Notes under the pieces: generated by a model
The model's database searches: none
The model's input: only the letters and a program-made list of their open reading frames with translations
Told to the model about the DNA's origin: nothing
From: Klebsormidium nitens
Taxonomy: Eukaryota > Plantae > Klebsormidiophyceae
Reading direction: 5' to 3'
NCBI GenBank assembly: GCA_000708835.1
Contig: DF237067.1
Location: 124,001 to 188,000, forward strand
DNA: 64,000 bases
Made by a program: the position numbers and the translations under genes
In this document: positions 1,994-54,430 of the stretch, in pieces
Position numbering within the stretch: position 1 is the first letter of the stretch
Layout: every line of letters begins with the position of its first letter

Positions 1994-4900
1994 TCATAGT
2001 TCTGTTACCCAGCCTGTGGAGTCCTGCGGCTTTTTCACGCCCCGTTCTTTCAGGAGCGTTTCTAATTCGTGGACGACCTGTCAAGCGACACGAGATGTTA
2101 AGATGGAATCTGCAACGAGCAATCAAGAAAGCGTCGGGGAGCAAGTGCTTGGGGAATGGTGCTGAACAAAGAACAGTCAGAACTCCCACCATTCCTCACC
2201 TTTTCAACTAGGCTCGCTGTGCTCATCTCCTCTTCGCCCTCTTCGTACCCTGCCAAGACACAGGACCATGATAAGCTCTCTCTGTTCATGTGAGCCGTGA
2301 GATGGACACTGCCCTCCCAGCTGGCCAAGCGAGAAATTTTCGACGCTTTCGTTCTCGAGATCAGAGCGCGAAAGGAAAGGGCTACTCGTAAATGCAAAGT
2401 AAGCAGTGAGCAACTCAGAAAGGACCATCACGAAGCAAAGAGCAATGACGCCAAGTAAGACATAACGCACCTGCTATTGAGACTGTTACGTCCGCATTCT
2501 CGTAGAAGGCTTTTCTGTCCTTCCAGATGGTTGACAGCCTCGTGAACGCCTGCACGAGAACACAATTGAGTACGTTTGCAAGTCTCAGGGGACTGACAAG
2601 TCATCCAGTAAAGACAGAGGCTCGCCATGATACAGCACTTCTCAGCTCGAATTGTTTGCAGTCTATGCCTCCAAGGGTCTCCAAGTGAAGGCAAGCAAGC
2701 TTGGAATATTTCGTGGAAGTCAGTGAAAGCCCCTAAAGAGAAGAGCGTAAAGAGCAGGACCTTCGTTTCAGCGCTCTCGTCTGTGGCATCCCCTCCGTTC
2801 AGCAGTGGCCTGGACGCATGGCCGTTCTTTGTGACGCGCTTTGCCAGGGTTTGAATAGGCACTTGCAGGAAAATGGAGATGCCGTAGTGCATGCTACTCC
2901 TGGGCATGGAAAGAAACGACAACGAAGTCAGAGGCACATCGCGGAAGAAGTGACGAGAAAAGCTATGAGTGCAAAAGCCGATATGCTTGGGCAAACTACC
3001 TCTAAAAGCTGACACTTAAAGCACCGGGCGCCCTTCGCATTTCATGACTACTGTAGTGCCATTGGCACCCATTGACCTGACAGACAGGTTGCTTAATGAC
3101 GGGAGAGCTAATCCAGCACCACGTGCCAGACAAATGTAATAATCTGCCAGCAGTGAACTCCAACTTGCCAAAACCCTCAACCCTTTGAGGCGGGCCATCG
3201 AGCACTGGAATTGTGCCCGATATAGCAAAGAGGAAAGCAAAAGAACTTTTCTGAAGGACAACACGACTGAAGGGCTTCGACCTTGCTCACCAGTTCTCTT
3301 TTCTCAGCACGGCACCACCTCCTGTGGATATCACGGATCTTGTTTCTCTGGCCAGTTGCGACAAGACTTCAGTCTGCACAGTAGCATGCCAGACTTTCTT
3401 AGGCAGTCGAGCTATGTCGTTCATGACCTTTTGCCGAGATTGCTGAGTGCACGAGAGAGGAGGCGCATAGTGCAAAAAGCAGGTCAAGAAAGGTGGAACA
3501 GGAACAATCAGGCAAGCGCCATTTGCAACTTCCAGTGACTTGGGTGAACAGGGACGAGCCGACAGCGAAGCACCATCAGAAATCGGCTCCACACCTCAAG
3601 CTTTCGAAAGGTGTCCTCTCCGTTCTCCTTGAAAATCTGAGAGACAGGTGCTCCTACAGCACCTTCGATAACTTCGTCACTGCAGCACAATGGAAAAAGG
3701 CCATGTCAGAAAGACCACCGCCTAGATTCCGCCCGATTGCTGGCTGCTCGTTCTTTCCCAGATATGGACATGCATTGCAAACAAAGGAGAAACAACCCAG
3801 CTTGGGTATCTTAACGGGGGATGCAAGACTTACAAGCTCCTTAAACCACCACCCCGGGTATAACTCGGGGCAAACCGGCTGGCATTCGCGCCAACGGCCA
3901 CCGAATTTCAAATTTCGGCCCGAAGGCGCTCGCTTCCAGCTTGTGCATTTTTGACCTTATACATCAAAGAAGCTGAAAGCATTACTTCACCATTTTCGGC
4001 GGTTTTGCTTTCTAGAGCTCTATCTTGTGGGAAAAACAAGGCCAGGTCGAAACCGCCGCTCAGTTCGTGCAGAAACGGCCTGTTTTTGCGTAGGCAGGGG
4101 TACCTTCTTCATGTGTGCGTCCAGTGTGCGCCCGTCGCGAATTTCAAGTTGCGAACTTGATTATGAGCATTCCTGGTTACCAGGAGTATTTATACCTTGG
4201 GTGGTGGTTTAAGTGGACGGACTAAGACTGACCATAAATTGAGTTTAGATGATGCAAGCTGGAATTGAGTATGCAAGGAGCCGGCTTCACCAGTCAAAAA
4301 ACCGGTATTGTAACCGCTCGGCCAGTAGCTTCCCAATTGTGCTTTTGCCGCTGCCCATCATGCCTGCTCCAAGGAGGGTTCAAAGCTCATATCAGTGAGG
4401 GAGCATCGATGTCACACGGAATATAGGAGATTACAGGCAGCAAAAAAAATGGAGAATCAGATTCCGAAATCCTGCAGCAAGGCTTCAGTGCGATGGCTCT
4501 GCACTTGTGACGCCAGTGATTGATAACAGCCTCCTCAACTCACCTACAAGGTACACATTGACCCCACCCAATGCCTTAGCAACTCCGACTGCTTTCTCCT
4601 GCAAGAACACAGTCTGTTTGTATCGCAGCACGGTGTCTGTAGTAATTACTAATAAGTGTCAGAAGATTGTGGGGCTATGAACTGCATCAGAGGCCGATAC
4701 GAGGGCGCATGCTGCCCCCACTAGCTATCAGCTCACATCAACTCTGAAGTGGTGTCGATTGATCTTGCCTGCACTCTCCGTTCTGACTCCGGCTCCAAGG
4801 AATCTCGTCGAGGAGTGGCTGGAAAGAGCAGATTAACAGAAGTCAGACACCTGTCAGCTTCAGACACTTTCAAACATACACAAAGGTGCAGGAGTGTTTC

Positions 4901-46500: not shown

Positions 46501-48652
46501 TTTAATAGGCAAATCACACTTTTGCCCACTTGCCACCGCTGAAGCTCATAGACTGATCGACAGAGATATACTCACCTCTTTCTTCTTTGTGTTGATGTCC
46601 CTGTCACTGAAGACATCCACACGTATCCCTGGAGAAGCAGTGCACTCGTGATCAGAGACTTAGCATACTTGGCAAAAGATTGTCAATCCAAACATCCATT
46701 TCGGCCGTAATTCCCGTCTACCAAAACTTGGTAGTGTAAAGGATAGGCTCAAAAGTTCTGCACCATACTCTTAATGTTACACATCAGAAAGGCAGCACTC
46801 TTCCGCTTCCTCCTGGACAGTGTCTTAAAGCTCGCCCTTCATAATCCTTTCAGTACCCATTCCATATGCAAAGAGCACCGCACCTGGGAACCTCTCCCGC
46901 ACTTGCGCTGCCGCTTGCTTGTAGAGCGCGACGTTGAACGACTCAAACCCAGAGATCAACACAATCCTGGCCTCCCGCCCCTCCACCAAGTTGCGCACTA
47001 TCTCCTCCTCCTCGCCACCAACGTCCACTTCTGGAACAACACTGGATGCGCTCAAAGCTTCCTGGACTTGTGCCTCCAATCGTTTTGCCTCCTGCACGAA
47101 GACAGCCTAGCTCTGAGAGGGGCCCTTGGCGTGCTTGCTACCAGGTAGAGGACAAGCGGGCACAATAGGAGAGTGGGTCAACTAGAAAATGGTTGCGAGG
47201 GGCTCTCAAAGTCATTTGTTTCTTTCAAGACTGCCTGATTGAGAATCAATCAGTGGTTTTGCGGATAGACTGGCTGGCGCATGGTTGTGACCCCAAATGC
47301 TTGAAACTTCTTGCAAACCGTCTGGAACTTTAAGCCCACTGATGGCCGAAGGTGATATCACCTCAACTCCCTGATTTCCACAGAAAGAAGGGGCATGATC
47401 CATATGTGGGCACAAACCTGACATGCTGTTTTTCTAAATTATGACGATGCCTAGCAAGGTTTCCTCAAAGGCTCCGGGACTGCAAGTGCCTCTACTATGA
47501 TTAACAAAGCATAGAAGCAGTAAAATCTGCAAGTGTTTCATGCTTCTTGAGTGAAGAAGCTTGGGTTTTCTTTTTGAAGCAACGTAGTGCATCTCTCACC
47601 CCCTCTGTTGTTTTGAATGAAGGCTCTACAGCAATCATACCTTGGCGATGCGGTCCCTGGTTAGCTGGAGAGGGTGGATGTTCCGTTGGAACGCCTGCCA
47701 CTTCTGCCGGTCCACCGAAGCTGCACCACAAGCAATGGGCCTCGAGGGTCAAAAGACTGAGACATCTGAGGAGCCCAAGCATTTGAATTTGCAATTCCGC
47801 CAAACGATAATGTCCATTTCCAGCGCAGTCAAATCCAAAATTTGTTCACTGGCAGGCAATCACTTGAAAGCTACAGTACTTGATTGCAACCACCACCTGC
47901 CCAATTCTCGCGACCGCCTCCAATGACCAACTAATAATGACAAGAAAGGCCACGATTGACGTACCCATCAGCTGCTTCATCAATGCTGGATCGCTCCGAC
48001 CAATTTCCCGCCATGTCTGCTCAGAAACCTTTTCCAAAACTCTCCCCTCCGGTTTGACCTCCTGGGGTTTCTGGAACAGGTTCTGCAGAAACCCAGCCTG
48101 AGCAACGACTTCTCCCTCTTTCCTGCCCTCTTTCTCTACCCCCTGCTCAAGCTGTACATTCGAAAATGTGCAGTTGTAAAGGTTGTCAATCTCTGTCTGT
48201 AGCTGCTGTAGTTTGTCGGTCTTCTGCTGAAGCTCGCTCTGCAGTTGTCTGCTCAGCTCAGAGCCGCCTTCCACGGCCGCCACAAACTCTTCTGACCGGC
48301 TCGTTTGACCGGCTTCGACCTCTCTTTCCGTGGCTGTAACTGCTTTTATTGAGCTCCTTCGCTGTGATATTCTGGGCGTCCTTTTTTGAATGTTTACAGA
48401 AGTCCCCAGAAAGTTGCTAGAAGGGGGCAACTTGCAATGCTGGAGAAATGCTGTGCCCGGCACTGATTGGTTGGTGAGGGGGGGTGAACGTCTGCGCCGA
48501 CCACACCCTGCATTATGGACCTCTCTCCCGCCAGCTTGTACAAAAGAAAAGGCTGACTGGCGTGCTCCTGCAGTAGAAAGGGAGCCTGCAGGCATGAATC
48601 TGCTTGTTATGCAGCCATGAAAGGCGCCTTGAACAGCTGTGGTGGAAGCCAT
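34559..48652 (-). CDS. CHLH2: Magnesium chelatase subunit H paralog (CHLH2 / cyanobacterial second-BchH type, CobN/Mg-chelatase family), ~1583 aa, 25 exons
   Basis: Exons 48652-47965, 47720-47641, 47091-46884, 46628-46576, 46388-46326, 45967-45876, 45285-45081, 44585-44462, 44192-43948, 43632-43429, 42905-42777, 42297-42104, 41619-41401, 41015-40817, 40205-40094, 39844-39666, 39122-38847, 38433-38344, 38100-37950, 37494-37205, 36889-36683, 36237-36089, 35849-35678, 35330-35109, 34759-34559, all phase-compatible. Motifs [128 protein letters not shown]. Exons 1-2 rest on phase only. Confidence 0.93.
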
Positions 48653-48749
48653 GATGTGTCACTGTCAGGACTCAGCCTCCTCAAAAATGCAGCGCTTCGC
48701 AGAGTGTTCCAGACTGCATCATGTGTTCCCAGTGATATTTAGCGTGCTA

Positions 48750-49061
48750 CCGTAGAGCGCCCAAAACCGGATCACGTACCATTAGTGGATCACCCCCGCC
48801 CTAAACTGGACCTATCTTGATCCAGTCTCGTATTTCCAACTGTCCAAAACTGGATCAGCGCTTTTGTGCGGAAAATCGAGGTTTTTGACTCCAGAGTATG
48901 ACCTAGAGTTGGTCAAATCTGGATCCAAGTGCATCGGCAGATAGCCCTTGAAAAACCTGGATATGTGGAGAAAACCGCACTTTAAATTTGTAAATGCGTT
49001 AAGAAATACTGCAAATAAGCGGTGCGAAAAATAAGGTGATCCAGTAATGGGCGCTCTACGG
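48750..49061. mobile_element. MITE / non-autonomous DNA transposon, Tc1/mariner-type (TA target duplication), 312 bp
   Basis: Perfect 14-bp terminal inverted repeats CCGTAGAGCGCCCA (48750-48763) and TGGGCGCTCTACGG (49048-49061), flanked by TA on both sides (48748-49, 49062-63). Subterminal inverted repeat CCATTAGTGGATCACC / GGTGATCCAGTAATGG, several internal (C)TGGATC motifs, AT-richer interior, no ORF. Confidence 0.85.
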
Positions 49062-49548
49062 TACTTTTGATCTATCCAACTTCAACGGCGCGCGATTGTG
49101 ACCGTCTATTCACCAACGCAAGGCCCTGCAAATGATCGTCCGGCCCGGCGGACTTTGTTTCTCTGACATCCTGTCAGAAATCCAAACGCTCTTTGGGCGC
49201 TTCGATGTTGAAATTGACAACAATTGACGGTCCGATTCGCTTCTTAGCCGATAAAACCGCGATCCGGAGATTCTAATTCCGTGCTCGGTACGTCTCTGGT
49301 ACGTACCAGGACTCGGAAAAGCCGCCAACTGGCATTTAAAATTTAAGGGCTTCGAAACTTCACAGTGTTCAGACTCAGTGCAGAAGTCTGAAGGACGCAT
49401 GGCAATTAGGCTGAGCTGCCTGATCCAGATGTTAAAAGGGTTGATGGAGGTGCCACAGCCAAAGATGGCCGCATAGGGAGGCTTTTGTCAATGCAAGCTC
49501 AGGCCCTCATTCGCACACCTGGAACTCACCCAGAAGGCGTTCTAGAAA

Positions 49549-52500
49549 ATGTTGCAAGTTTGTAGAACAGGTTTGTCAAGTAGATTCGGACAACTCAAGT
49601 GCAGCCCACGTCTGCAAGCCTCAAACAATCACGCCCTGCTTCGCTCTTTCTTGTCAGGCTCCAATTGCCTTCCTTTCCCTGCTCTGGTTAGCAAAGTGCT
49701 ACTTTGGGGACCTGGGCAACATACCACTCGATCTGGTAGCGGTGCACTTTCAAAAATACACTATAATTTTTACACGTCCAGTTTCTCACAATTCAGGAGT
49801 GCTGAGCGGGCCTGCTTGATGGAAACCAACGCCAACCACTCGCATGCTCAACCAGTGCCAACACAGGAGTCAACCACCCTGGACGCTTTGGATCCAGCGG
49901 AGCTACAATTGGTGGAAGTTGGCCTGCGAAATGCACTAGCAGCTTTGCAAACTGGCGGAACTAACGCTGCTGTCCTGTCAACTAGGATATGCCAGCAGCT
50001 CTTAGAAGGTGAGAAAGCAAAATCTGCTCATCAAGTATCAAACGCAAACTGCATACTTTCAGAAGTTGCACTTTGTTTGAGGGTGCTAGGATCCTTGTGC
50101 ATCAACAACGTGCGGCTGCTTCACCGTTCAAAATAAAATAAGCGATGCCTGTGCTTTAGATCAGACCACCGGCTGATTGGCTAGCGGTGGCCGCCCCTCC
50201 CTATTGTTTGATCCTTTTGGGTTTTCAATGCAGTCAATGCTCCTCATAATCTCGACAAACGTTGTGTCTTCTTGTTCCCCTTCAGAAGAACCAAATCAGA
50301 ATGAAGCTAGCGCCGCTAATGCTACCCCCGGCCATAGCCAGTCCGGAGTCTTGTCGCGTCCGCTTGTGCGCCACGTGGCGTGGGCCCTCTTGCAGTGGCA
50401 CAAGGCTGGGCGCTTCCCTGTTGAGCTGCCGCCCATTGAGGGCCTGCAGGAAGATCGTAGCTGGGAAGGGGAACTAGATGGCTGGACACGAAAGATAGAG
50501 ACAGCGCTTGGGGCCCTTCTTGAGGTGAGGAACTAAAGTCCCCTTTTGCTTGCTTCCCCCAGAACAGATCAGGAGAAGTCATTCCGGGGAGGCATGTTAG
50601 AGTCAAGCTTCACCACTGTTTCTTGGACCAAACATTTTTGCCAATGGAAACGCGGCGTGCAGATGTGGTGATGCTTCCAGACGGCCAGATCGGGTGTTCT
50701 GTAAGTGCTGTTCGTGGGCAGCTTGTAATCGATGGGACAATGTTGTCTTTTTCCAGGTTCGAAAAGCCGCTCTGAGTCTCCACGTCCAAGAGCCATGGTT
50801 CTCCCACTTGAAAAGTGAGCACGTCCTAACGCCTCCTGTACCGAGCGTTGCGTAAGGAATTGGCAATCCATCAATCTGTTGAATGCCTTTAGCAGCCAAC
50901 GTTTCAGGTCCCTAGTTTTCAGGTCTTTGCCGCCTTTTTCTTTTCAACGCAACTATATGGCCAGGTCATGGTTGCTAACAGCCGCCGAGCATGCGTCCGG
51001 TCCTTGTTCGTGTTCTTCGTAAGCGGATGATTGCCGTTCTATTTCACAGGCACGTTGTGTGGCAGGTCGCATTGCCTTCGCGACCTGCGCTAACAGATAC
51101 AGGAATACGGATACGAAGAATTGTCTTCTGCATCAAAAAATTTGTGTCTGTCGATAGGTCCTCGATTTATATTTGTTTCTCAAGACCGAAGAAAGGAACC
51201 GCAAGGCGCAGCTCAGAGCGTCTGACAGATGTGTAAAGCTTTCTGCAGGCGGAGCGAAGAGCGTGGAAGGGCGGTGTGCAAAAGAAGCGTATACCAGGTG
51301 ACTTAGGTTTTCATCCACTTCAAATCACACGGCGTTTGGAAGCTCGATTCTGGACTTTTGTGCTTTCCATAGCCAATGATTGGCACAATCTTCGAGGGGT
51401 GTTATGCGAAGGAGGACTCTGGGTAGAGCGCCCAGAGACCGAGTGCGTGACACTTGTCGCGTCACTTTCTGAGAGGAAGTATCTGCTGACCAACTTGACG
51501 CTCGCGTTTGGACCAAATGACCGATTCCAAAGTTTTTATGACTCCCACTGCAGGCTTGAAGTTGGAAGTATACTTTTGGTGAACGACTCCCTGCTTCTCC
51601 AAGTAAAGGTATGGCCGAGCGGCTTTGCAACCTTGCCTCTCAACGTGCGAAGCAGTACAGTCGGCAAAACGGCCGTTTGGAAGGACGAGCGTCTGTCCGT
51701 CACTCTGAATTTCCGAAGTCGCACTTACCCGTTGCGGTTTCCAAAGCAATCTACTTGCTTGTGGGCACGCGTTTGTGGCCTTCGTGACATCGTAGACTTT
51801 CCGTTCCGTTGGAAACATCAGAGCCATCTCAGTGTCAGACTGTAAGCCTGACTGCATTTCCCGTGGTATCTGCAACAGGCCTCCGTTAACTACGACAGCT
51901 TTTCCTCCCTCCTGGCACAAGAAGGGCTCCAACGCGTTCTACCAGGCTGCGCCTCGCATGTTGATGGTGAGCCGCCACCTGTCCTCCGTCTGCACCTTGT
52001 TGTAGAAAGTATTTCCAGAGGCGACAGCGAGCTTGCGTGCCGAGCTGGGACTTCTTGCTTTGCGCCTTGCTTTGCGGTACCTAGGAGCTTCTCTCAAAGC
52101 GCAATCATGGACAGCGCCAAAGTAGTCCAGTACGTCGAACAGGTAAACACCTCAGGACCGCATTACAGGGCGACCTGCTCGAGAGTTTGGTACTTGAACC
52201 TCATGTCGAAGTAGCTTTGAGCAGACTCTTATCTCGCCCTGAAAGTTGCTACACTCCACGATAAGCTGAGTCATCCGAGGACTGCACCAATGATCCTCGG
52301 CCATCGATCGCCAGTTGAGCTGCCCTGCATAAACGATTTCGTGAAAGTGTTTCCCCTACAGGCCTTGCATTTCCAGACTACTCAATGCCAAAACAAGAAA
52401 GCAACGGGACCACACAAAGAGAGACACCCCAAGTTTCCCATTCCATACAAGCTCCCCTCTGCCCTGGACCGGCAAAGTGCTTCGAATCCGTCCTCGGCGC

Positions 52501-54430
52501 ATTCCCAGTCGTCACGCGTTTCAAACTTTCTTTCCAGGCTGCACGGTGTATCGAGCTTTCTACACGGAAGAGCAAGAGAGGGCGGCCGGCGTTGTGGCAA
52601 TCCACGTGGAGCCTTGCCCAGAGGACACGCAACCCGTGCATCGTATCATGACTCTTCTGCAAGTAAGATCGCATCAAAAGGGCGCGTGTTTCACGGAAAA
52701 GAACGGTCGTTGCAGGCTTTTGTGACATGAGAAAGCAGCAAACGGGGCTCTCAAAAGACAATTGGTCCGTCCAACGATTACGAAGGAAAAGCTTCTGGGT
52801 GGCCGGTAGTATTTTGCAGACGGTTCCGGCATGCCACTGATGTCGTTTGACTGCTCTGCTCCGTGCGTCCATGTACCCAAGATGTCGTTTAACCTGTCTT
52901 TTGAATCGACGTCAAGTCTGCTTTTGTCGCTATCCCTCTTCAAGAGTTGTTGGTCCCTGATTGCAGGAGCTAGGACCGCGCCCCCTCTTTTTGCTGCTGC
53001 GAATGCGGAGGACCGCGGGCTCCATCGACGATCTGCTGGCCCCCTCTCGGGCCACCATGCTGGCGGCCTTCGACGCACTGAACGACCCCAAAAAGTAGGC
53101 CCATCGTCGCAGGTTATTTCGAAGTCGTGGGCAGAAGAATTTTCAACGATGCCTCGTCCAGCCTGCGTATTGCTGCCCAACTCGGTCAGGCAGACAGCCT
53201 TCGAAAAGGCAATAAGCCTTTTCGCACGTATGCCTTTTCATTTTCAGAGATGGTCAACAGAAGCCAATGAACGTTGTCTTCGTCATTAAACGGAAGCTTT
53301 AAGCCGTACTGCTCGCGAACCTCCGCCGGCGTCGCAAAGTCCGCCACGTGGCCTCGTCCTACTTGTCCTGCTGCAGCCGGCTCACCGTCGGCGCCCGCGC
53401 CTTGACGAAGCACGCCCACCGGTGCAGCCACAACTGGTGGGGCGTGCCCACCGGCTCAGGTCAGCTACCTTTACTTTTCTCAGAGTCTGATCGTCGATAA
53501 CTAAAAACGCAGTTTTGAAAAAGGCAGAGTGGATTGTGTGTGTCAGCCGAAATGATGCAGGCGGGTGCTTCGAAAAACCGTGTTCTTTTCAACAGGGTGT
53601 GCCACACAAGTTGTAGTTGGTGAGCCCTACTGATCATTCGATTGCACCATTCGGATATTGCTGATTCGAAACCAAACCCCTTTGAAAACAGCGGCTCATC
53701 ATGCGGACGGTTTGCTTGGTCAACAGTCCTGACTTTGGAGGAGCAAGCAACTTCAAATCTGCCAGCATTACCTTTTAGCCCATGATGACTCGACGACCAA
53801 CCTGACGTTCCCTTCGTCTGCGCTGCAGAGCAAGCCAAAAACGAGCACGCGCGAGCAGTCGTTCTGCGGATCCTGGACGGCGCGGTGTGGCAGAACGCGC
53901 ACCTTTTACCGCACGACGTGGCCGTCTTCGAAGCCCGCGTGGCAGAGGGGTACGGCGCGCGCTGGTCGGCCGACGGAACACAGGCACGTGCCGCGCAAAC
54001 CTCTCAATGCTAGCTCTGCACTTTTCGACACAGCCGGCCGCTCCATGGCATTTCCTCTTCCTCGTATGTTGTCCTCTTATAGTGGCTGGCCAGTAGCCTT
54101 CCTTTTAGAGGTGCTTCGAGCGGGAAGCGATTCTGAGACGACTAGAAATGTGAACTTGTGAAGTGAGTCAAATTTCGCCTGCTTCTAGCGTAGGCAGTTC
54201 TTATGTAGCTGACGAACTGCTCTTACAACGGTGCAGACTACCAGGACCTTTGATTTAAGCGGCGCAGAAAATGGAAGGTCGGAAGCCCTCTTAACCCTGT
54301 CTATCGTTTGTGGCTCATCGGCGAGCAAACGAAGAGATGAAGCGAAGTTCGAATGTTTCTCTTCCCCCAGTTCCGAGGCTTTCTGGAGCCGCAGATGGAA
54401 GGCGGCCACCAGCGAGGATGGCGGCACTAA
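49549..54430 (+). CDS. ASCH (PUA-like RNA-binding) domain protein with conserved C-terminal domain, plant RNA-binding ASCH family, ~499 aa, 11 exons
   Basis: Exons 49549-50008, 50286-50524, 50757-50814, 51249-51297, 51554-51608, 51879-51966, 52538-52662, 52967-53094, 53377-53459, 53829-53983, 54371-54430. ASCH core LHVQEPWFSHLKSGAKSVEGRC...YDSFSSLL..EGL.RVLPG...VYRAFYTEEQER..GVVAIHV. C-terminal LTVGARALTKHAHR...EGYGARWSADGTQFRGFLEP..GH.RGWRH*. The last intron needs a GC donor. Confidence 0.88.

What the first reader, a model, noticed from the sequence alone, without database searches (positions are those of the whole stretch)
52967..54430. ASCH protein ends in a domain patterned like bacterial CdiA/RHS polymorphic-toxin RNases: possible domesticated ASCH-RNase system
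Seen: the last three exons encode RLTVGARALTKHAHRCSHNWWGVPTGSEQAKNEHARAVVLRILDGAVWQNAHLLPHDVAVFEARVAEGYGARWSADGTQFRGFLEP. From recall, a family of bacterial CdiA/RHS C-terminal toxin domains assigned to the BECR (barnase/EndoU/colicin/RelE) RNase fold, such as the Cupriavidus taiwanensis CdiA-CT type, follows the pattern L[TS]..[AG]RA..KH..R ... G....KN..A...V..IL ... VE.....G.G.R....G.F.GFL[DE]P. This matches motif by motif, including a His/Arg cluster (KHAHR) that could be catalytic. Known: ASCH domains (GxKxxExR, here GAKSVEGR) bind RNA, and some are RNases or N4-acetylcytidine amidohydrolases; plant members of this family are annotated only as RNA-binding ASCH proteins. Inference: a conserved green-lineage fusion of an RNA/modified-base reader with a toxin-derived nuclease, possibly acting on tRNA or rRNA in organelles. 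I am not aware of it being described, but cannot check the literature.
Basis: partly seen in the sequence, partly recalled or inferred. Interest (0 to 1): 0.8.

Follow-up and report, generated by a model that had tools for sequence, protein, structure and literature searches.

The report
Toxin-like RNase domain in ASCH protein
This expressed gene of the alga Klebsormidium nitens ends in a domain that is a true relative of a bacterial contact-dependent tRNA-cutting toxin, but the domain belongs to an old, uncharacterised protein family found across eukaryotes, Asgard archaea and bacteria, into which green plants and their algal relatives inserted an RNA-binding ASCH domain.

Summary
The window gene (49819-54430, + strand, 11 exons) encodes exactly the 409-aa Klebsormidium nitens "RNA-binding ASCH domain protein" (P0151). 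All ten introns are spliced as modelled in contigs from four studies.

Residues 300-396 are homologous to the toxic tip of Pseudomonas aeruginosa CdiA (PDB 6D7Y), a BECR-fold tRNase:
- Profile against PDB: E 1.3e-7, the only hit. The window protein alone gives E 2.6e-4.
- AlphaFold model against 6D7Y: Z 12.5-12.9, rmsd 1.7-1.8 Å over 92 of 92 residues. Colicin D comes next (Z 7).
- The toxin's published catalytic His3372 aligns with invariant His323. K322, R326, E373, R375 and R383 are also invariant.
- The same domain ends a Pantoea VENN (CdiA-type) toxin and a Protochlamydia RHS toxin.

The "domesticated toxin of the green lineage" reading is only partly right. The RNase module, with its N-terminal helical region, is a Pfam-less family of about 280 aa in animals, fungi, Amoebozoa and algae. 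Stand-alone relatives of about 240 aa occur in bacteria and Asgard archaea, without immunity genes. Only streptophytes carry the ASCH domain, and it is inserted mid-protein. It is of the Pyrococcus PH0355 type (Z 21).

The likely function is a tRNA-directed endoribonuclease. This is untested.

The parts
49819..54430 (+). Whole coding region of the gene; encodes the 409-aa protein P0151 (Klebsormidium nitens 'RNA-binding ASCH domain protein'). Exons: 49819-50008, 50286-50524, 50757-50814, 51249-51297, 51554-51608, 51879-51966, 52538-52662, 52967-53094, 53377-53459, 53829-53983, 54371-54430.
   Evidence: Exact spliced match of P0151 to the window. All ten joints are present in contigs of four runs from four studies.
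49819..50765 (+). N-terminal helical region (aa 1-146), introns included. It holds the family motif around aa 85-110 (...RPL..H.A.AL..W...G.FP...).
   Evidence: AF2 helices 26-44, 55-62, 70-75, 90-104 and 122-147. The motif is conserved in ASCH-less eukaryotic members and weakly in prokaryotic ones. No convincing structural relative was found; the region was not folded alone.
50766..52620 (+). Inserted ASCH domain (aa 147-254), spread over exons 3-7, introns included.
   Evidence: Pfam ASCH in orthologues. phmmer to PH0355 (2z0t_A) E 5e-19 and PF0455 (1s04_A) E 1.5e-17. VIA Z 21.0, rmsd 1.0, 108/109 residues to 2z0t_A; Z 12.0 to E. coli YqfB. Absent at this position in non-streptophyte members.
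51251..51274 (+). ASCH signature octapeptide G-A-K-S-V-E-G-R (aa 164-171; GxKxxExR).
   Evidence: Conserved as G.K[ST][IV]EGR in all streptophyte orthologues aligned.
52621..53059 (+). Family-specific connector (aa 255-299): two helices plus the conserved segment R.T.GS....PP (here RRTAGSIDDLLAPS). Present in eukaryotic and prokaryotic stand-alone members. Lies upstream of the part that superposes on the solved toxin tip (which starts at aa 300).
   Evidence: The toxin-equivalent part starts at aa 300.
53060..54388 (+). BECR-fold RNase-like core (aa 300-396), equivalent to the whole solved CdiA-CT toxin tip; exons 8 (end) to 11 (start), introns included.
   Evidence: 6d7y_A: profile E 1.3e-7; single sequence E 2.6e-4; Foldseek prob 1.0, TM 0.86; VIA Z 12.9 and 12.5, rmsd 1.7-1.8, 92/92 residues, 28-30% identity. 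Colicin D Z 7.0-7.1. Other CdiA-CT, BrnT and RelE-like toxins Z 3-5.
53408..53422 (+). Codons K322-H323-A324-H325-R326. K322, H323 and R326 are invariant. H323 is the predicted catalytic histidine.
   Evidence: Invariant columns. H323 aligns with SEQRES His25 of 6d7y_A, which is residue 3372 by the entry's numbering. His3372 is the published catalytic residue (PMC9086364).
53930..53965 (+). Codons E373 to W384 (E-A-R ... G-Y-G-A-R-W), the invariant strand residues E373, R375, G379, G381, R383 and W384.
   Evidence: Invariant. Matched by L-E-K-R and G-R-G-V-R of the toxin.
54392..54430 (+). Eukaryote-specific C-terminal tail (aa 398-409, QMEGGHQRGWRH) and the stop codon. The family consensus is ..GH..GW.H at the very C-terminus.
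   Evidence: The tail ends most of the 150 best family members. It is absent from prokaryotic stand-alone members and from toxins. Model confidence is lower here (pLDDT 66-77).
53984..54370 (+). Intron 10, with a GC donor (GC-AG).
   Evidence: joint 53980>54368 with 3 ambiguous letters, seen in all four runs.

Best explanation
The gene encodes the streptophyte version of an ancient, uncharacterised protein family. It consists of an N-terminal helical region, a conserved connector, and a C-terminal BECR-fold (barnase/EndoU/colicin/RelE) RNase domain.

That RNase domain is a true homologue of the toxic tip of CdiA and RHS polymorphic toxins. [quoted passage not shown] The domain keeps the toxin's catalytic histidine (H323 here) and the surrounding K322, R326, E373, R375 and R383.

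In the common ancestor of streptophytes, a complete archaeal-type ASCH domain (PH0355/PF0455 type, GxKxxExR intact) was inserted between the N-terminal region and the connector.

I infer that the protein is a metal-independent endoribonuclease acting on tRNA or another structured RNA. The histidine would act in acid/base catalysis, leaving a cyclic-phosphate end as in other BECR RNases. The ASCH insert would add RNA binding, possibly recognition or removal of N4-acetylcytidine.

Shown here: the gene model and its expression, the homology, the fold, residue conservation, the insertion architecture and the distribution.

Inferred: catalytic activity, tRNA as substrate, the role of ASCH, and that the cellular family is not derived from a toxin.
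For: Gene and expression:
- Exact 11-exon match to P0151.
- All joints present in four runs from four studies.

Homology to the toxin:
- (sequence and profile).
- (structure). The models have pLDDT 93.8 and 91.2 and were made without templates.

Catalytic residue:
- The chain is numbered 3352-3443 over 92 modelled residues of a 96-residue construct, so SEQRES His25 is His3372.
- The review PMC9086364 names His3372 as the key catalytic residue and gives the tRNA-Gln/Pro cleavage.
- K, H and R, E.R and G.G.R are invariant in 60, 44 and 32 sequence alignments and in prokaryotic members.

ASCH:
-.
- A 2026 preprint reports that ASCH proteins of the GKER motif group deacetylate ac4C in tRNA in vitro.

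Insertion and its age:
- ASCH sits at the same position in Chlorokybus, Mesostigma, Klebsormidium, Mesotaenium, Closterium and angiosperms.
- It is absent in animals, Amoebozoa, a fungus and the one chlorophyte seen.

Ancient cellular family:
- 430 representative clusters at E<=1e-3 from one 52-aa exon.
- Sponges, cnidarians, molluscs, annelids, echinoderms, brachiopods, Cavostelium and Gonapodya.
- More than 120 clusters of ~240-aa stand-alone prokaryotic members, among them Planctomycetota, Heimdallarchaeota and Hermodarchaeota, in ordinary gene contexts.
- Eukaryotes and prokaryotes split at 100/98 support.
Against: - No enzymatic data exist for any member of the cellular family.
- A constitutively active tRNase in the cytosol would be harmful, so activity must be restricted in some unseen way or be weak.
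- One toxin relative (Pantoea) has Tyr in place of the His, so the His is not universal in the wider clade.
- The tree is unrooted and holds no toxin sequences, so the direction (toxin from cellular enzyme, or the reverse) is not settled.
- Only two prokaryotic loci and two toxin loci were examined in context.
- The ASCH deacetylase data come from a preprint on other ASCH proteins.
- The residue numbering of His3372 assumes that the four unmodelled construct residues are all N-terminal.
Confidence: 0.6

Rival explanations
1. Domesticated toxin: a bacterial CdiA/RHS toxin tip was transferred to the green lineage, fused to an ASCH reader and tamed, with the N-terminal part acting as a built-in immunity module.
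For: True homology to toxin tips that sit behind VENN and RHS modules and are followed by small ORFs 4 nt downstream. The BECR toxins are a large radiation with known transfers to eukaryotes (Zhang et al. 2012, PMC3482391).
Against: The nuclease module with the same N-terminal region and connector is present across eukaryotes without ASCH. It also occurs as ~240-aa stand-alone proteins in bacteria and Asgard archaea, with no conserved small neighbour. Eukaryotes sit on one side of a 100/98 branch of an unrooted tree, apart from all prokaryotic rows. The toxins lack the connector and the N-terminal region. The N-terminal region is not similar to the small ORF that follows the Pantoea toxin gene, and the two such ORFs are not similar to each other. 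Foldseek of the full model did not find the CdiI chain of 6D7Y.
Confidence: 0.12
2. Catalytically silent RNA-binding module: the BECR-like domain has lost cleavage activity and serves only to bind RNA (or a protein partner), and any chemistry in plants comes from ASCH.
For: There are no activity data. The family is tolerated in the cytosol of many organisms. The BECR fold includes non-cleaving or ribosome-dependent members. The conserved eukaryote-only tail (GH..GW.H) could occupy the active site.
Against: The toxin's catalytic His and five charged neighbours are invariant over eukaryotes, bacteria and archaea. That is the pattern expected for an active site rather than a binding surface alone.
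Confidence: 0.2
3. The enzyme acts on a substrate other than tRNA (rRNA, mRNA on the ribosome, or a small nucleotide such as a cyclic or capped species).
For: BECR members cut 16S rRNA (colicin E3, CdiA-CT ECL), mRNA (RelE) or hydrolyse cCMP (CdiA-CT Ykris), according to the review table read. Fold does not fix the substrate.
Against: The two closest characterised relatives by Z-score, CdiA-CT PABL017 and colicin D, are both tRNases. ASCH proteins were reported to act on tRNA.
Confidence: 0.25

Closest known systems
CdiA-CT of Pseudomonas aeruginosa PABL017 (PDB 6D7Y chain A), with the related tips of a Pantoea dispersa VENN pre-toxin protein and a Protochlamydia RHS protein
   Same: Same fold and detectable sequence homology over the whole toxin tip: 28-30% identity, rmsd 1.7-1.8 Å over 92/92 residues. 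Shared motifs..A..KH..R, WG...G...N..A.E.R, G.G.R, DG.F.GF. The published catalytic His aligns with invariant H323.
   Different: The toxins are the last ~95 residues of secreted multi-kilodalton CdiA/RHS proteins and are followed by a small ORF of the kind expected for an immunity gene. The window protein is an intracellular eukaryotic protein. It has an N-terminal helical region, a connector, an inserted ASCH domain and a C-terminal GH..GW.H tail, and no delivery module or immunity gene. No Pfam model covers the domain on either side.
Colicin D tRNase domain (PDB 5ZNM, 1TFK) and other BECR-fold RNases (BrnT, RelE/YoeB/YafQ/HigB, other CdiA-CT)
   Same: Same alpha+beta arrangement: helices followed by a four-stranded antiparallel sheet. 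Z 7.0-7.1 for colicin D and Z 3-5 for the others. The atlas search also finds phage PBECR3 and RelE clusters.
   Different: 8-12% identity only and no sequence-level signal. Equivalence of active-site residues was not checked residue by residue.
Archaeal stand-alone ASCH proteins PH0355 (2Z0T) and PF0455 (1S04); E. coli YqfB ac4C amidohydrolase (9KYF)
   Same: The ASCH insert matches PH0355 end to end (108/109 residues, rmsd 1.0, 38% identity, E 5e-19). It keeps GxKxxExR. YqfB superposes at Z 12.0.
   Different: Those are free ~110-aa proteins. Here the domain is an insertion inside another protein. No activity is known for PH0355/PF0455 from what I could read.
Modification-dependent nucleases built from a PUA-superfamily sensor plus a nuclease (e.g. 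EVE-HNH VcaM4I; PMC7897488, PMC7641849)
   Same: The same design logic: a PUA-like reader domain (ASCH) joined to a nuclease domain.
   Different: Those act on modified DNA and use HNH or PD-(D/E)XK nucleases. That the ASCH reads a modification here is untested.
Uncharacterised ~240-aa prokaryotic proteins (Planctomycetota P0314/L001, Heimdallarchaeota L002, Hermodarchaeota P0323/L005, many metagenomic)
   Same: The same N-region, connector and RNase core over the full length. All invariant residues are kept.
   Different: They have no ASCH, no GH..GW.H tail and a different loop (W.N.FGH..H). They sit on the other side of a 100/98 split from eukaryotes.

Membership tests
BECR-fold RNase superfamily, CdiA-CT(PABL017)-like clade | alpha+beta fold: N-terminal helices packed on a four-stranded antiparallel sheet, superposable on a solved member | tested here: met
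   AF2 pLDDT 93.8 and 91.2. 6d7y_A Z 12.9 and 12.5, rmsd 1.7-1.8, 92/92 residues. Colicin D Z 7. Foldseek prob 1.0.
BECR-fold RNase superfamily, CdiA-CT(PABL017)-like clade | Sequence homology to a characterised member | tested here: met
   hmmsearch E 1.3e-7. phmmer E 2.6e-4. hhalign E 4e-10 and 1.7e-7 to two further toxin tips.
BECR-fold RNase superfamily, CdiA-CT(PABL017)-like clade | Catalytic histidine (His3372 of the toxin) present and conserved | tested here: met
   H323 aligns with SEQRES His25, which is residue 3372. It is invariant. Caveat: the numbering offset is inferred.
BECR-fold RNase superfamily, CdiA-CT(PABL017)-like clade | RNA cleavage activity | not testable with these tools
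   No biochemical data for any cellular member were found in the held literature.
Polymorphic toxin system (CDI / RHS) | Toxin domain at the C-terminus of a secreted carrier with a pre-toxin module (VENN, RHS core) | tested here: not met
   P0151 has no such module; Pfam finds ASCH only. Compare L008, which has PT-VENN.
Polymorphic toxin system (CDI / RHS) | Cognate immunity gene immediately downstream | tested here: not met
   This is a eukaryotic monocistronic gene. The prokaryotic stand-alone homologues have varied neighbours. The N-terminal region is not similar to the small ORF that follows the Pantoea toxin gene.
ASCH domain (Pfam PF04266, PUA-like superfamily) | PUA-like beta-barrel fold | tested here: met
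   2z0t_A Z 21.0, rmsd 1.0. YqfB Z 12.0. Zymomonas ASCH Z 9.4. The Pfam ASCH model passes its cut-off in orthologues.
ASCH domain (Pfam PF04266, PUA-like superfamily) | Signature GxKxxExR | tested here: met
   GAKSVEGR at aa 164-171. Conserved in all streptophyte orthologues aligned.
ASCH ac4C amidohydrolases (YqfB type and relatives) | Deacetylation of N4-acetylcytidine, free or in tRNA | not testable with these tools
   Only a preprint on other ASCH proteins is available.

The most novel reading that the evidence does not exclude
The cellular family is an ancient tRNA endonuclease, in place before the last eukaryotic common ancestor and possibly inherited from Asgard archaea, from which bacteria recruited the CdiA/RHS toxin tip. 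In streptophytes the inserted ASCH domain turns it into a modification-guided RNase. It would read or erase N4-acetylcytidine on tRNA (or rRNA) and cut the RNA nearby. That would be an RNA counterpart of the modification-dependent restriction enzymes built from PUA-like sensors and nucleases.
Probability: 0.15. Interest if true: 0.85.

Novelty: new variant of a known kind. Interest (0 to 1): 0.62.

Why it matters
This gives a first, testable functional handle on a widespread protein family that has no Pfam or NCBIfam model. It occurs in hundreds of sequence clusters, from sponges and corals to land plants, and in Asgard archaea and bacteria. All members seen are annotated 'uncharacterized' or, in plants, merely 'ASCH domain protein'. 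The proposed handle is a histidine-dependent RNase of the colicin D / CdiA-CT type.

It also links a bacterial virulence-associated contact-dependent toxin to a cellular enzyme family. That bears on where polymorphic-toxin warheads come from.

For plant biology, it predicts that the 'RNA-binding ASCH domain protein' combines an RNase with a domain type recently reported to remove ac4C from tRNA. This suggests a route to regulated tRNA cleavage or quality control that can be tested with Arabidopsis mutants.

Tried and rejected
1. Exon-by-exon Pfam scans and a PDB phmmer with the 52-aa exon gave nothing. The signal needs the whole domain or a profile.
2. Pfam, NCBIfam and PADLOC scans of full-length eukaryotic and prokaryotic members and of the two toxin proteins found no model for the RNase domain. 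Hits were only ASCH, PT-VENN and chance-level matches. It is therefore none of the Pfam Ntox families as far as HMMER can see. Ntox41 and Ntox49 of Zhang et al. 2012 were considered on motif grounds and are not supported.
4. The primary paper on the toxin (Allen et al. 2020) and Allen & Hauser 2019 are not held. His3372 and the substrates are taken from the review PMC9086364.
5. Literature searches for ASCH plus polymorphic toxin, for the plant protein name and for three Arabidopsis gene codes recalled from memory found no functional study. I could not check which Arabidopsis gene is the orthologue. The maize insertion line for a homologue of AT3G03320 with normal pollen transmission is therefore left aside.
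6. Two of the four 'prokaryotic' loci from the genome scan (L003, L004) were rejected as eukaryotic DNA in bacterial bins. L003 holds an intron-split copy; L004 was not inspected and is judged only by its like match pattern.
7. Cis-immunity by homology: no similarity between the family's N-terminal part and the small ORF behind the Pantoea toxin gene. The small ORFs behind the two toxin genes are unrelated to each other.
10. Whether the N-terminal region or the tail covers the active site in the model could not be read, because model coordinates are not exposed.
Full report
**What is in the window**

I first read the region and translated the exons separately, by reference. Alone they match no Pfam family and no solved structure.

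A library-wide HMMER search with the 52-aa exon 53828-53983 found 430 representative clusters at E<=1e-3. A word search with one of them returned P0151, a 409-aa protein named 'RNA-binding ASCH domain protein [Klebsormidium nitens]'.

tblastn and a script walk show that P0151 is encoded exactly by eleven exons of the window, from 49819 to 54430 on the + strand. Nine introns are GT-AG and one is GC-AG. From then on I used P0151, a database protein, in place of any exon model joined by me.

Contigs of four public runs from four studies carry all ten splice joints, so the gene is transcribed and spliced as modelled. Minor alternative acceptors lie at 50394 and 51239, and there is some intron retention.

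**Is the C-terminus like a toxin RNase?**

Yes, on four independent lines of evidence.

- **Profile to PDB.** An alignment of 60 C-terminal domains (A1) searched as a profile against all PDB sequences found one entry only: 6d7y_A, the toxic C-terminal tip of CdiA from Pseudomonas aeruginosa. E was 1.3e-7 over profile positions 46-128. The window protein's own C-terminus finds the same chain at E 2.6e-4.
- **Domain model.** AlphaFold2 without templates gave a confident model of the domain (pLDDT 93.8): four helices followed by a four-stranded sheet. Foldseek put 6d7y_A first (probability 1.0, TM 0.86, rmsd 1.7). An exhaustive structural scan gave:
  - 6d7y_A: Z 12.9, rmsd 1.7, all 92 toxin residues aligned, 28% identity.
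  - Colicin D tRNase: Z 7.1 and 6.2.
  - Other CdiA-CT toxins, BrnT, and RelE, YoeB, YafQ, HigB and ParE: Z 3-5.
- **Full-length model.** The model of the window protein (pLDDT 91.2, pTM 0.89) gave the same picture, with Z 12.5 for residues 300-396. The entry was released in 2019. To my knowledge that is after the training cut-off of these AlphaFold weights, so the match is not a recalled template.
- **Further toxins.** A tblastn against plasmids found the domain at the very end of a Pantoea dispersa 'VENN motif pre-toxin domain-containing protein' and of a Protochlamydia 'RHS repeat-associated core domain-containing protein'. Each is followed 4 nt downstream by a 79-aa ORF. hhalign of A1 to these tips gives probability 96.7% (E 4e-10) and 93.8% (E 1.7e-7).

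The Cupriavidus example did not turn up.

**Catalytic residues**

The review PMC9086364 lists CdiA-CT PABL017 (6D7Y) as a BECR-fold toxin. [quoted passage not shown]

The chain is numbered 3352-3443 for 92 modelled residues of a 96-residue construct. If the four missing residues are N-terminal, SEQRES position i is residue 3347+i. The His of '..SKHAGR..' at position 25 is then His3372. It aligns with H323 of the window protein.

K322, H323, R326, E373, R375, G379, G381, R383 and W384 are invariant in 44 sequences that span plants, animals, protists, a bacterium and an archaeon. They are also invariant in the other alignments.

The second His of KHAHR is not conserved. One toxin (Pantoea) has K-Y in place of K-H.

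**Architecture**

Most family members are 270-330 aa and have no ASCH domain. They share three things:
- an N-terminal helical region with a conserved motif;
- a connector (..LLG.R.T.GS....PP..);
- the RNase core.

Eukaryotic members also end in ..GH..GW.H.

In streptophytes a complete ASCH domain sits between the N-terminal region and the connector, at one and the same position. In the window protein it is residues 147-254. It matches the free-standing Pyrococcus proteins PH0355 and PF0455 (E 5e-19 and 1.5e-17; Z 21.0, rmsd 1.0) and superposes on E. coli YqfB, an ac4C amidohydrolase (Z 12.0). The GxKxxExR signature is intact.

The high pTM suggests that the parts pack into one body. I could not inspect the interface.

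**Distribution and origin**

| Form | Where seen |
|---|---|
| With ASCH | Chlorokybus, Mesostigma, Klebsormidium, Mesotaenium, Closterium and many angiosperms |
| Without ASCH (eukaryotes) | Sponges, cnidarians, molluscs, annelids, echinoderms, a hemichordate, brachiopods, nemerteans, Cavostelium, Gonapodya, a Basidiomycota-rich atlas cluster, the chlorophyte Edaphochlamys |
| Stand-alone ~240 aa (prokaryotes) | Planctomycetota (among two-component genes); Heimdallarchaeota (beside ParA-like, PUA and FttA/aCPSF1 genes) |

No vertebrate, insect, nematode or ascomycete appeared among the rows listed. That is not proof of absence.

A profile of the two prokaryotic proteins found 263 proteins at E<=0.1. 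The best 120 were all 161-258 aa (all but four 224-258 aa), and they included a Hermodarchaeota protein lying next to gatD/gatE. These prokaryotic proteins keep every invariant residue but lack the eukaryotic tail.

A maximum-likelihood tree of 49 C-domains separates eukaryotes from prokaryotes at 100/98 support. The Heimdallarchaeota sequence is the first branch on the prokaryotic side, and the streptophyte algae group together.

The tree is unrooted and has no toxins in it, so direction is an inference. The shared N-terminal region and connector, the absence of delivery and immunity genes, and the breadth of the cellular family all speak for a cellular enzyme. Its core also serves as a toxin warhead; the green lineage did not tame a toxin.

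**How it most likely works**

The two nearest characterised relatives of the core are tRNases: CdiA-CT PABL017 and colicin D. A 2026 preprint reports that ASCH proteins with the same motif group remove ac4C from tRNA in vitro.

I therefore propose a histidine-dependent, metal-independent endoribonuclease that acts on tRNA or a similar structured RNA. In streptophytes the ASCH insert would add RNA, or modified-base, recognition.

The eukaryote-specific tail and the N-terminal region are candidates for substrate selection or restraint of activity. None of this is tested.

**Novelty**

The gene is annotated and ASCH is known, as are BECR toxins and eukaryotic relatives of other polymorphic-toxin domains. 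Three things appear in no model library or paper I could search:
- the link between this large uncharacterised family and the CdiA-CT PABL017 toxin;
- its presence in Asgard archaea;
- the mid-protein ASCH insertion in streptophytes.

The held literature is incomplete, so prior description cannot be excluded.

- No self-joined exon model was sent to any search or fold tool.
- The script concatenated exon letters in memory only, to verify identity with P0151. It printed coordinates only.
- The scan's other note on this stretch (s1-261886) is the same finding read in another window.

Noticed in passing
window 50286-50394 and 51239-51249: Alternative 3' splice sites in the transcript contigs. An acceptor at 50394 drops 108 nt (36 codons, in frame) of exon 2, at roughly a third to a half of the depth of the main form in all four runs. 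An acceptor at 51239 (10 nt upstream, frame-shifting) appears in one run. Contigs that retain introns are present at lower depth.
   Followed up: partly
window 48748-49063: A 28-nt imperfect inverted repeat pair (89% complementary) encloses about 260 nt, some 750 bp upstream of the start codon. It looks like a small terminal-inverted-repeat element (MITE-like).
   Followed up: no
window 47846-48652 (- strand): A long first-exon-like ORF (268 aa) begins with a Ser/Ala/Thr-rich N-terminus and is transcribed away from the ASCH gene. It is a divergent neighbour about 1.2 kb away and was not identified.
   Followed up: no
L005 5001-5717 and neighbours: The Hermodarchaeota homologue lies beside gatD/gatE (archaeal Glu-tRNA-Gln amidotransferase) and near a beta-CASP nuclease. 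The Heimdallarchaeota homologue (L002) also lies two genes from FttA/aCPSF1. This may be shared Asgard synteny or a hint of a tRNA/RNA-processing context.
   Followed up: partly
L001 5360-5647: A small ORF (85-95 aa, no Pfam match) ends 24 nt upstream of the Planctomycetota homologue on the same strand. It could be a partner or chance. No such neighbour is seen in L002, L005 or L007.
   Followed up: partly
L003 and L004 (records titled Stappiaceae bacterium and 'bacterium' MAGs): L003, from an assembly filed as bacterial, carries an intron-split eukaryotic copy of the family, so that contig is probably eukaryotic DNA in a bacterial bin. L004 was not inspected; it shows the same partial match pattern.
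   Followed up: partly
L008 2450-2791: The Pantoea VENN toxin tip has Lys-Tyr where the family and the solved toxin have Lys-His. Either this is a variant catalytic arrangement or an inactive orphan module.
   Followed up: no
P0014 (Closterium, 839 aa) and P0087 (Gonapodya, 1739 aa): The Closterium model repeats the '..EALTVGARALSKH..' segment three times, with long low-complexity inserts. The Gonapodya model joins the family to DUF4209 and SNF5 domains. Both look like gene-model artefacts or recent rearrangements.
   Followed up: no
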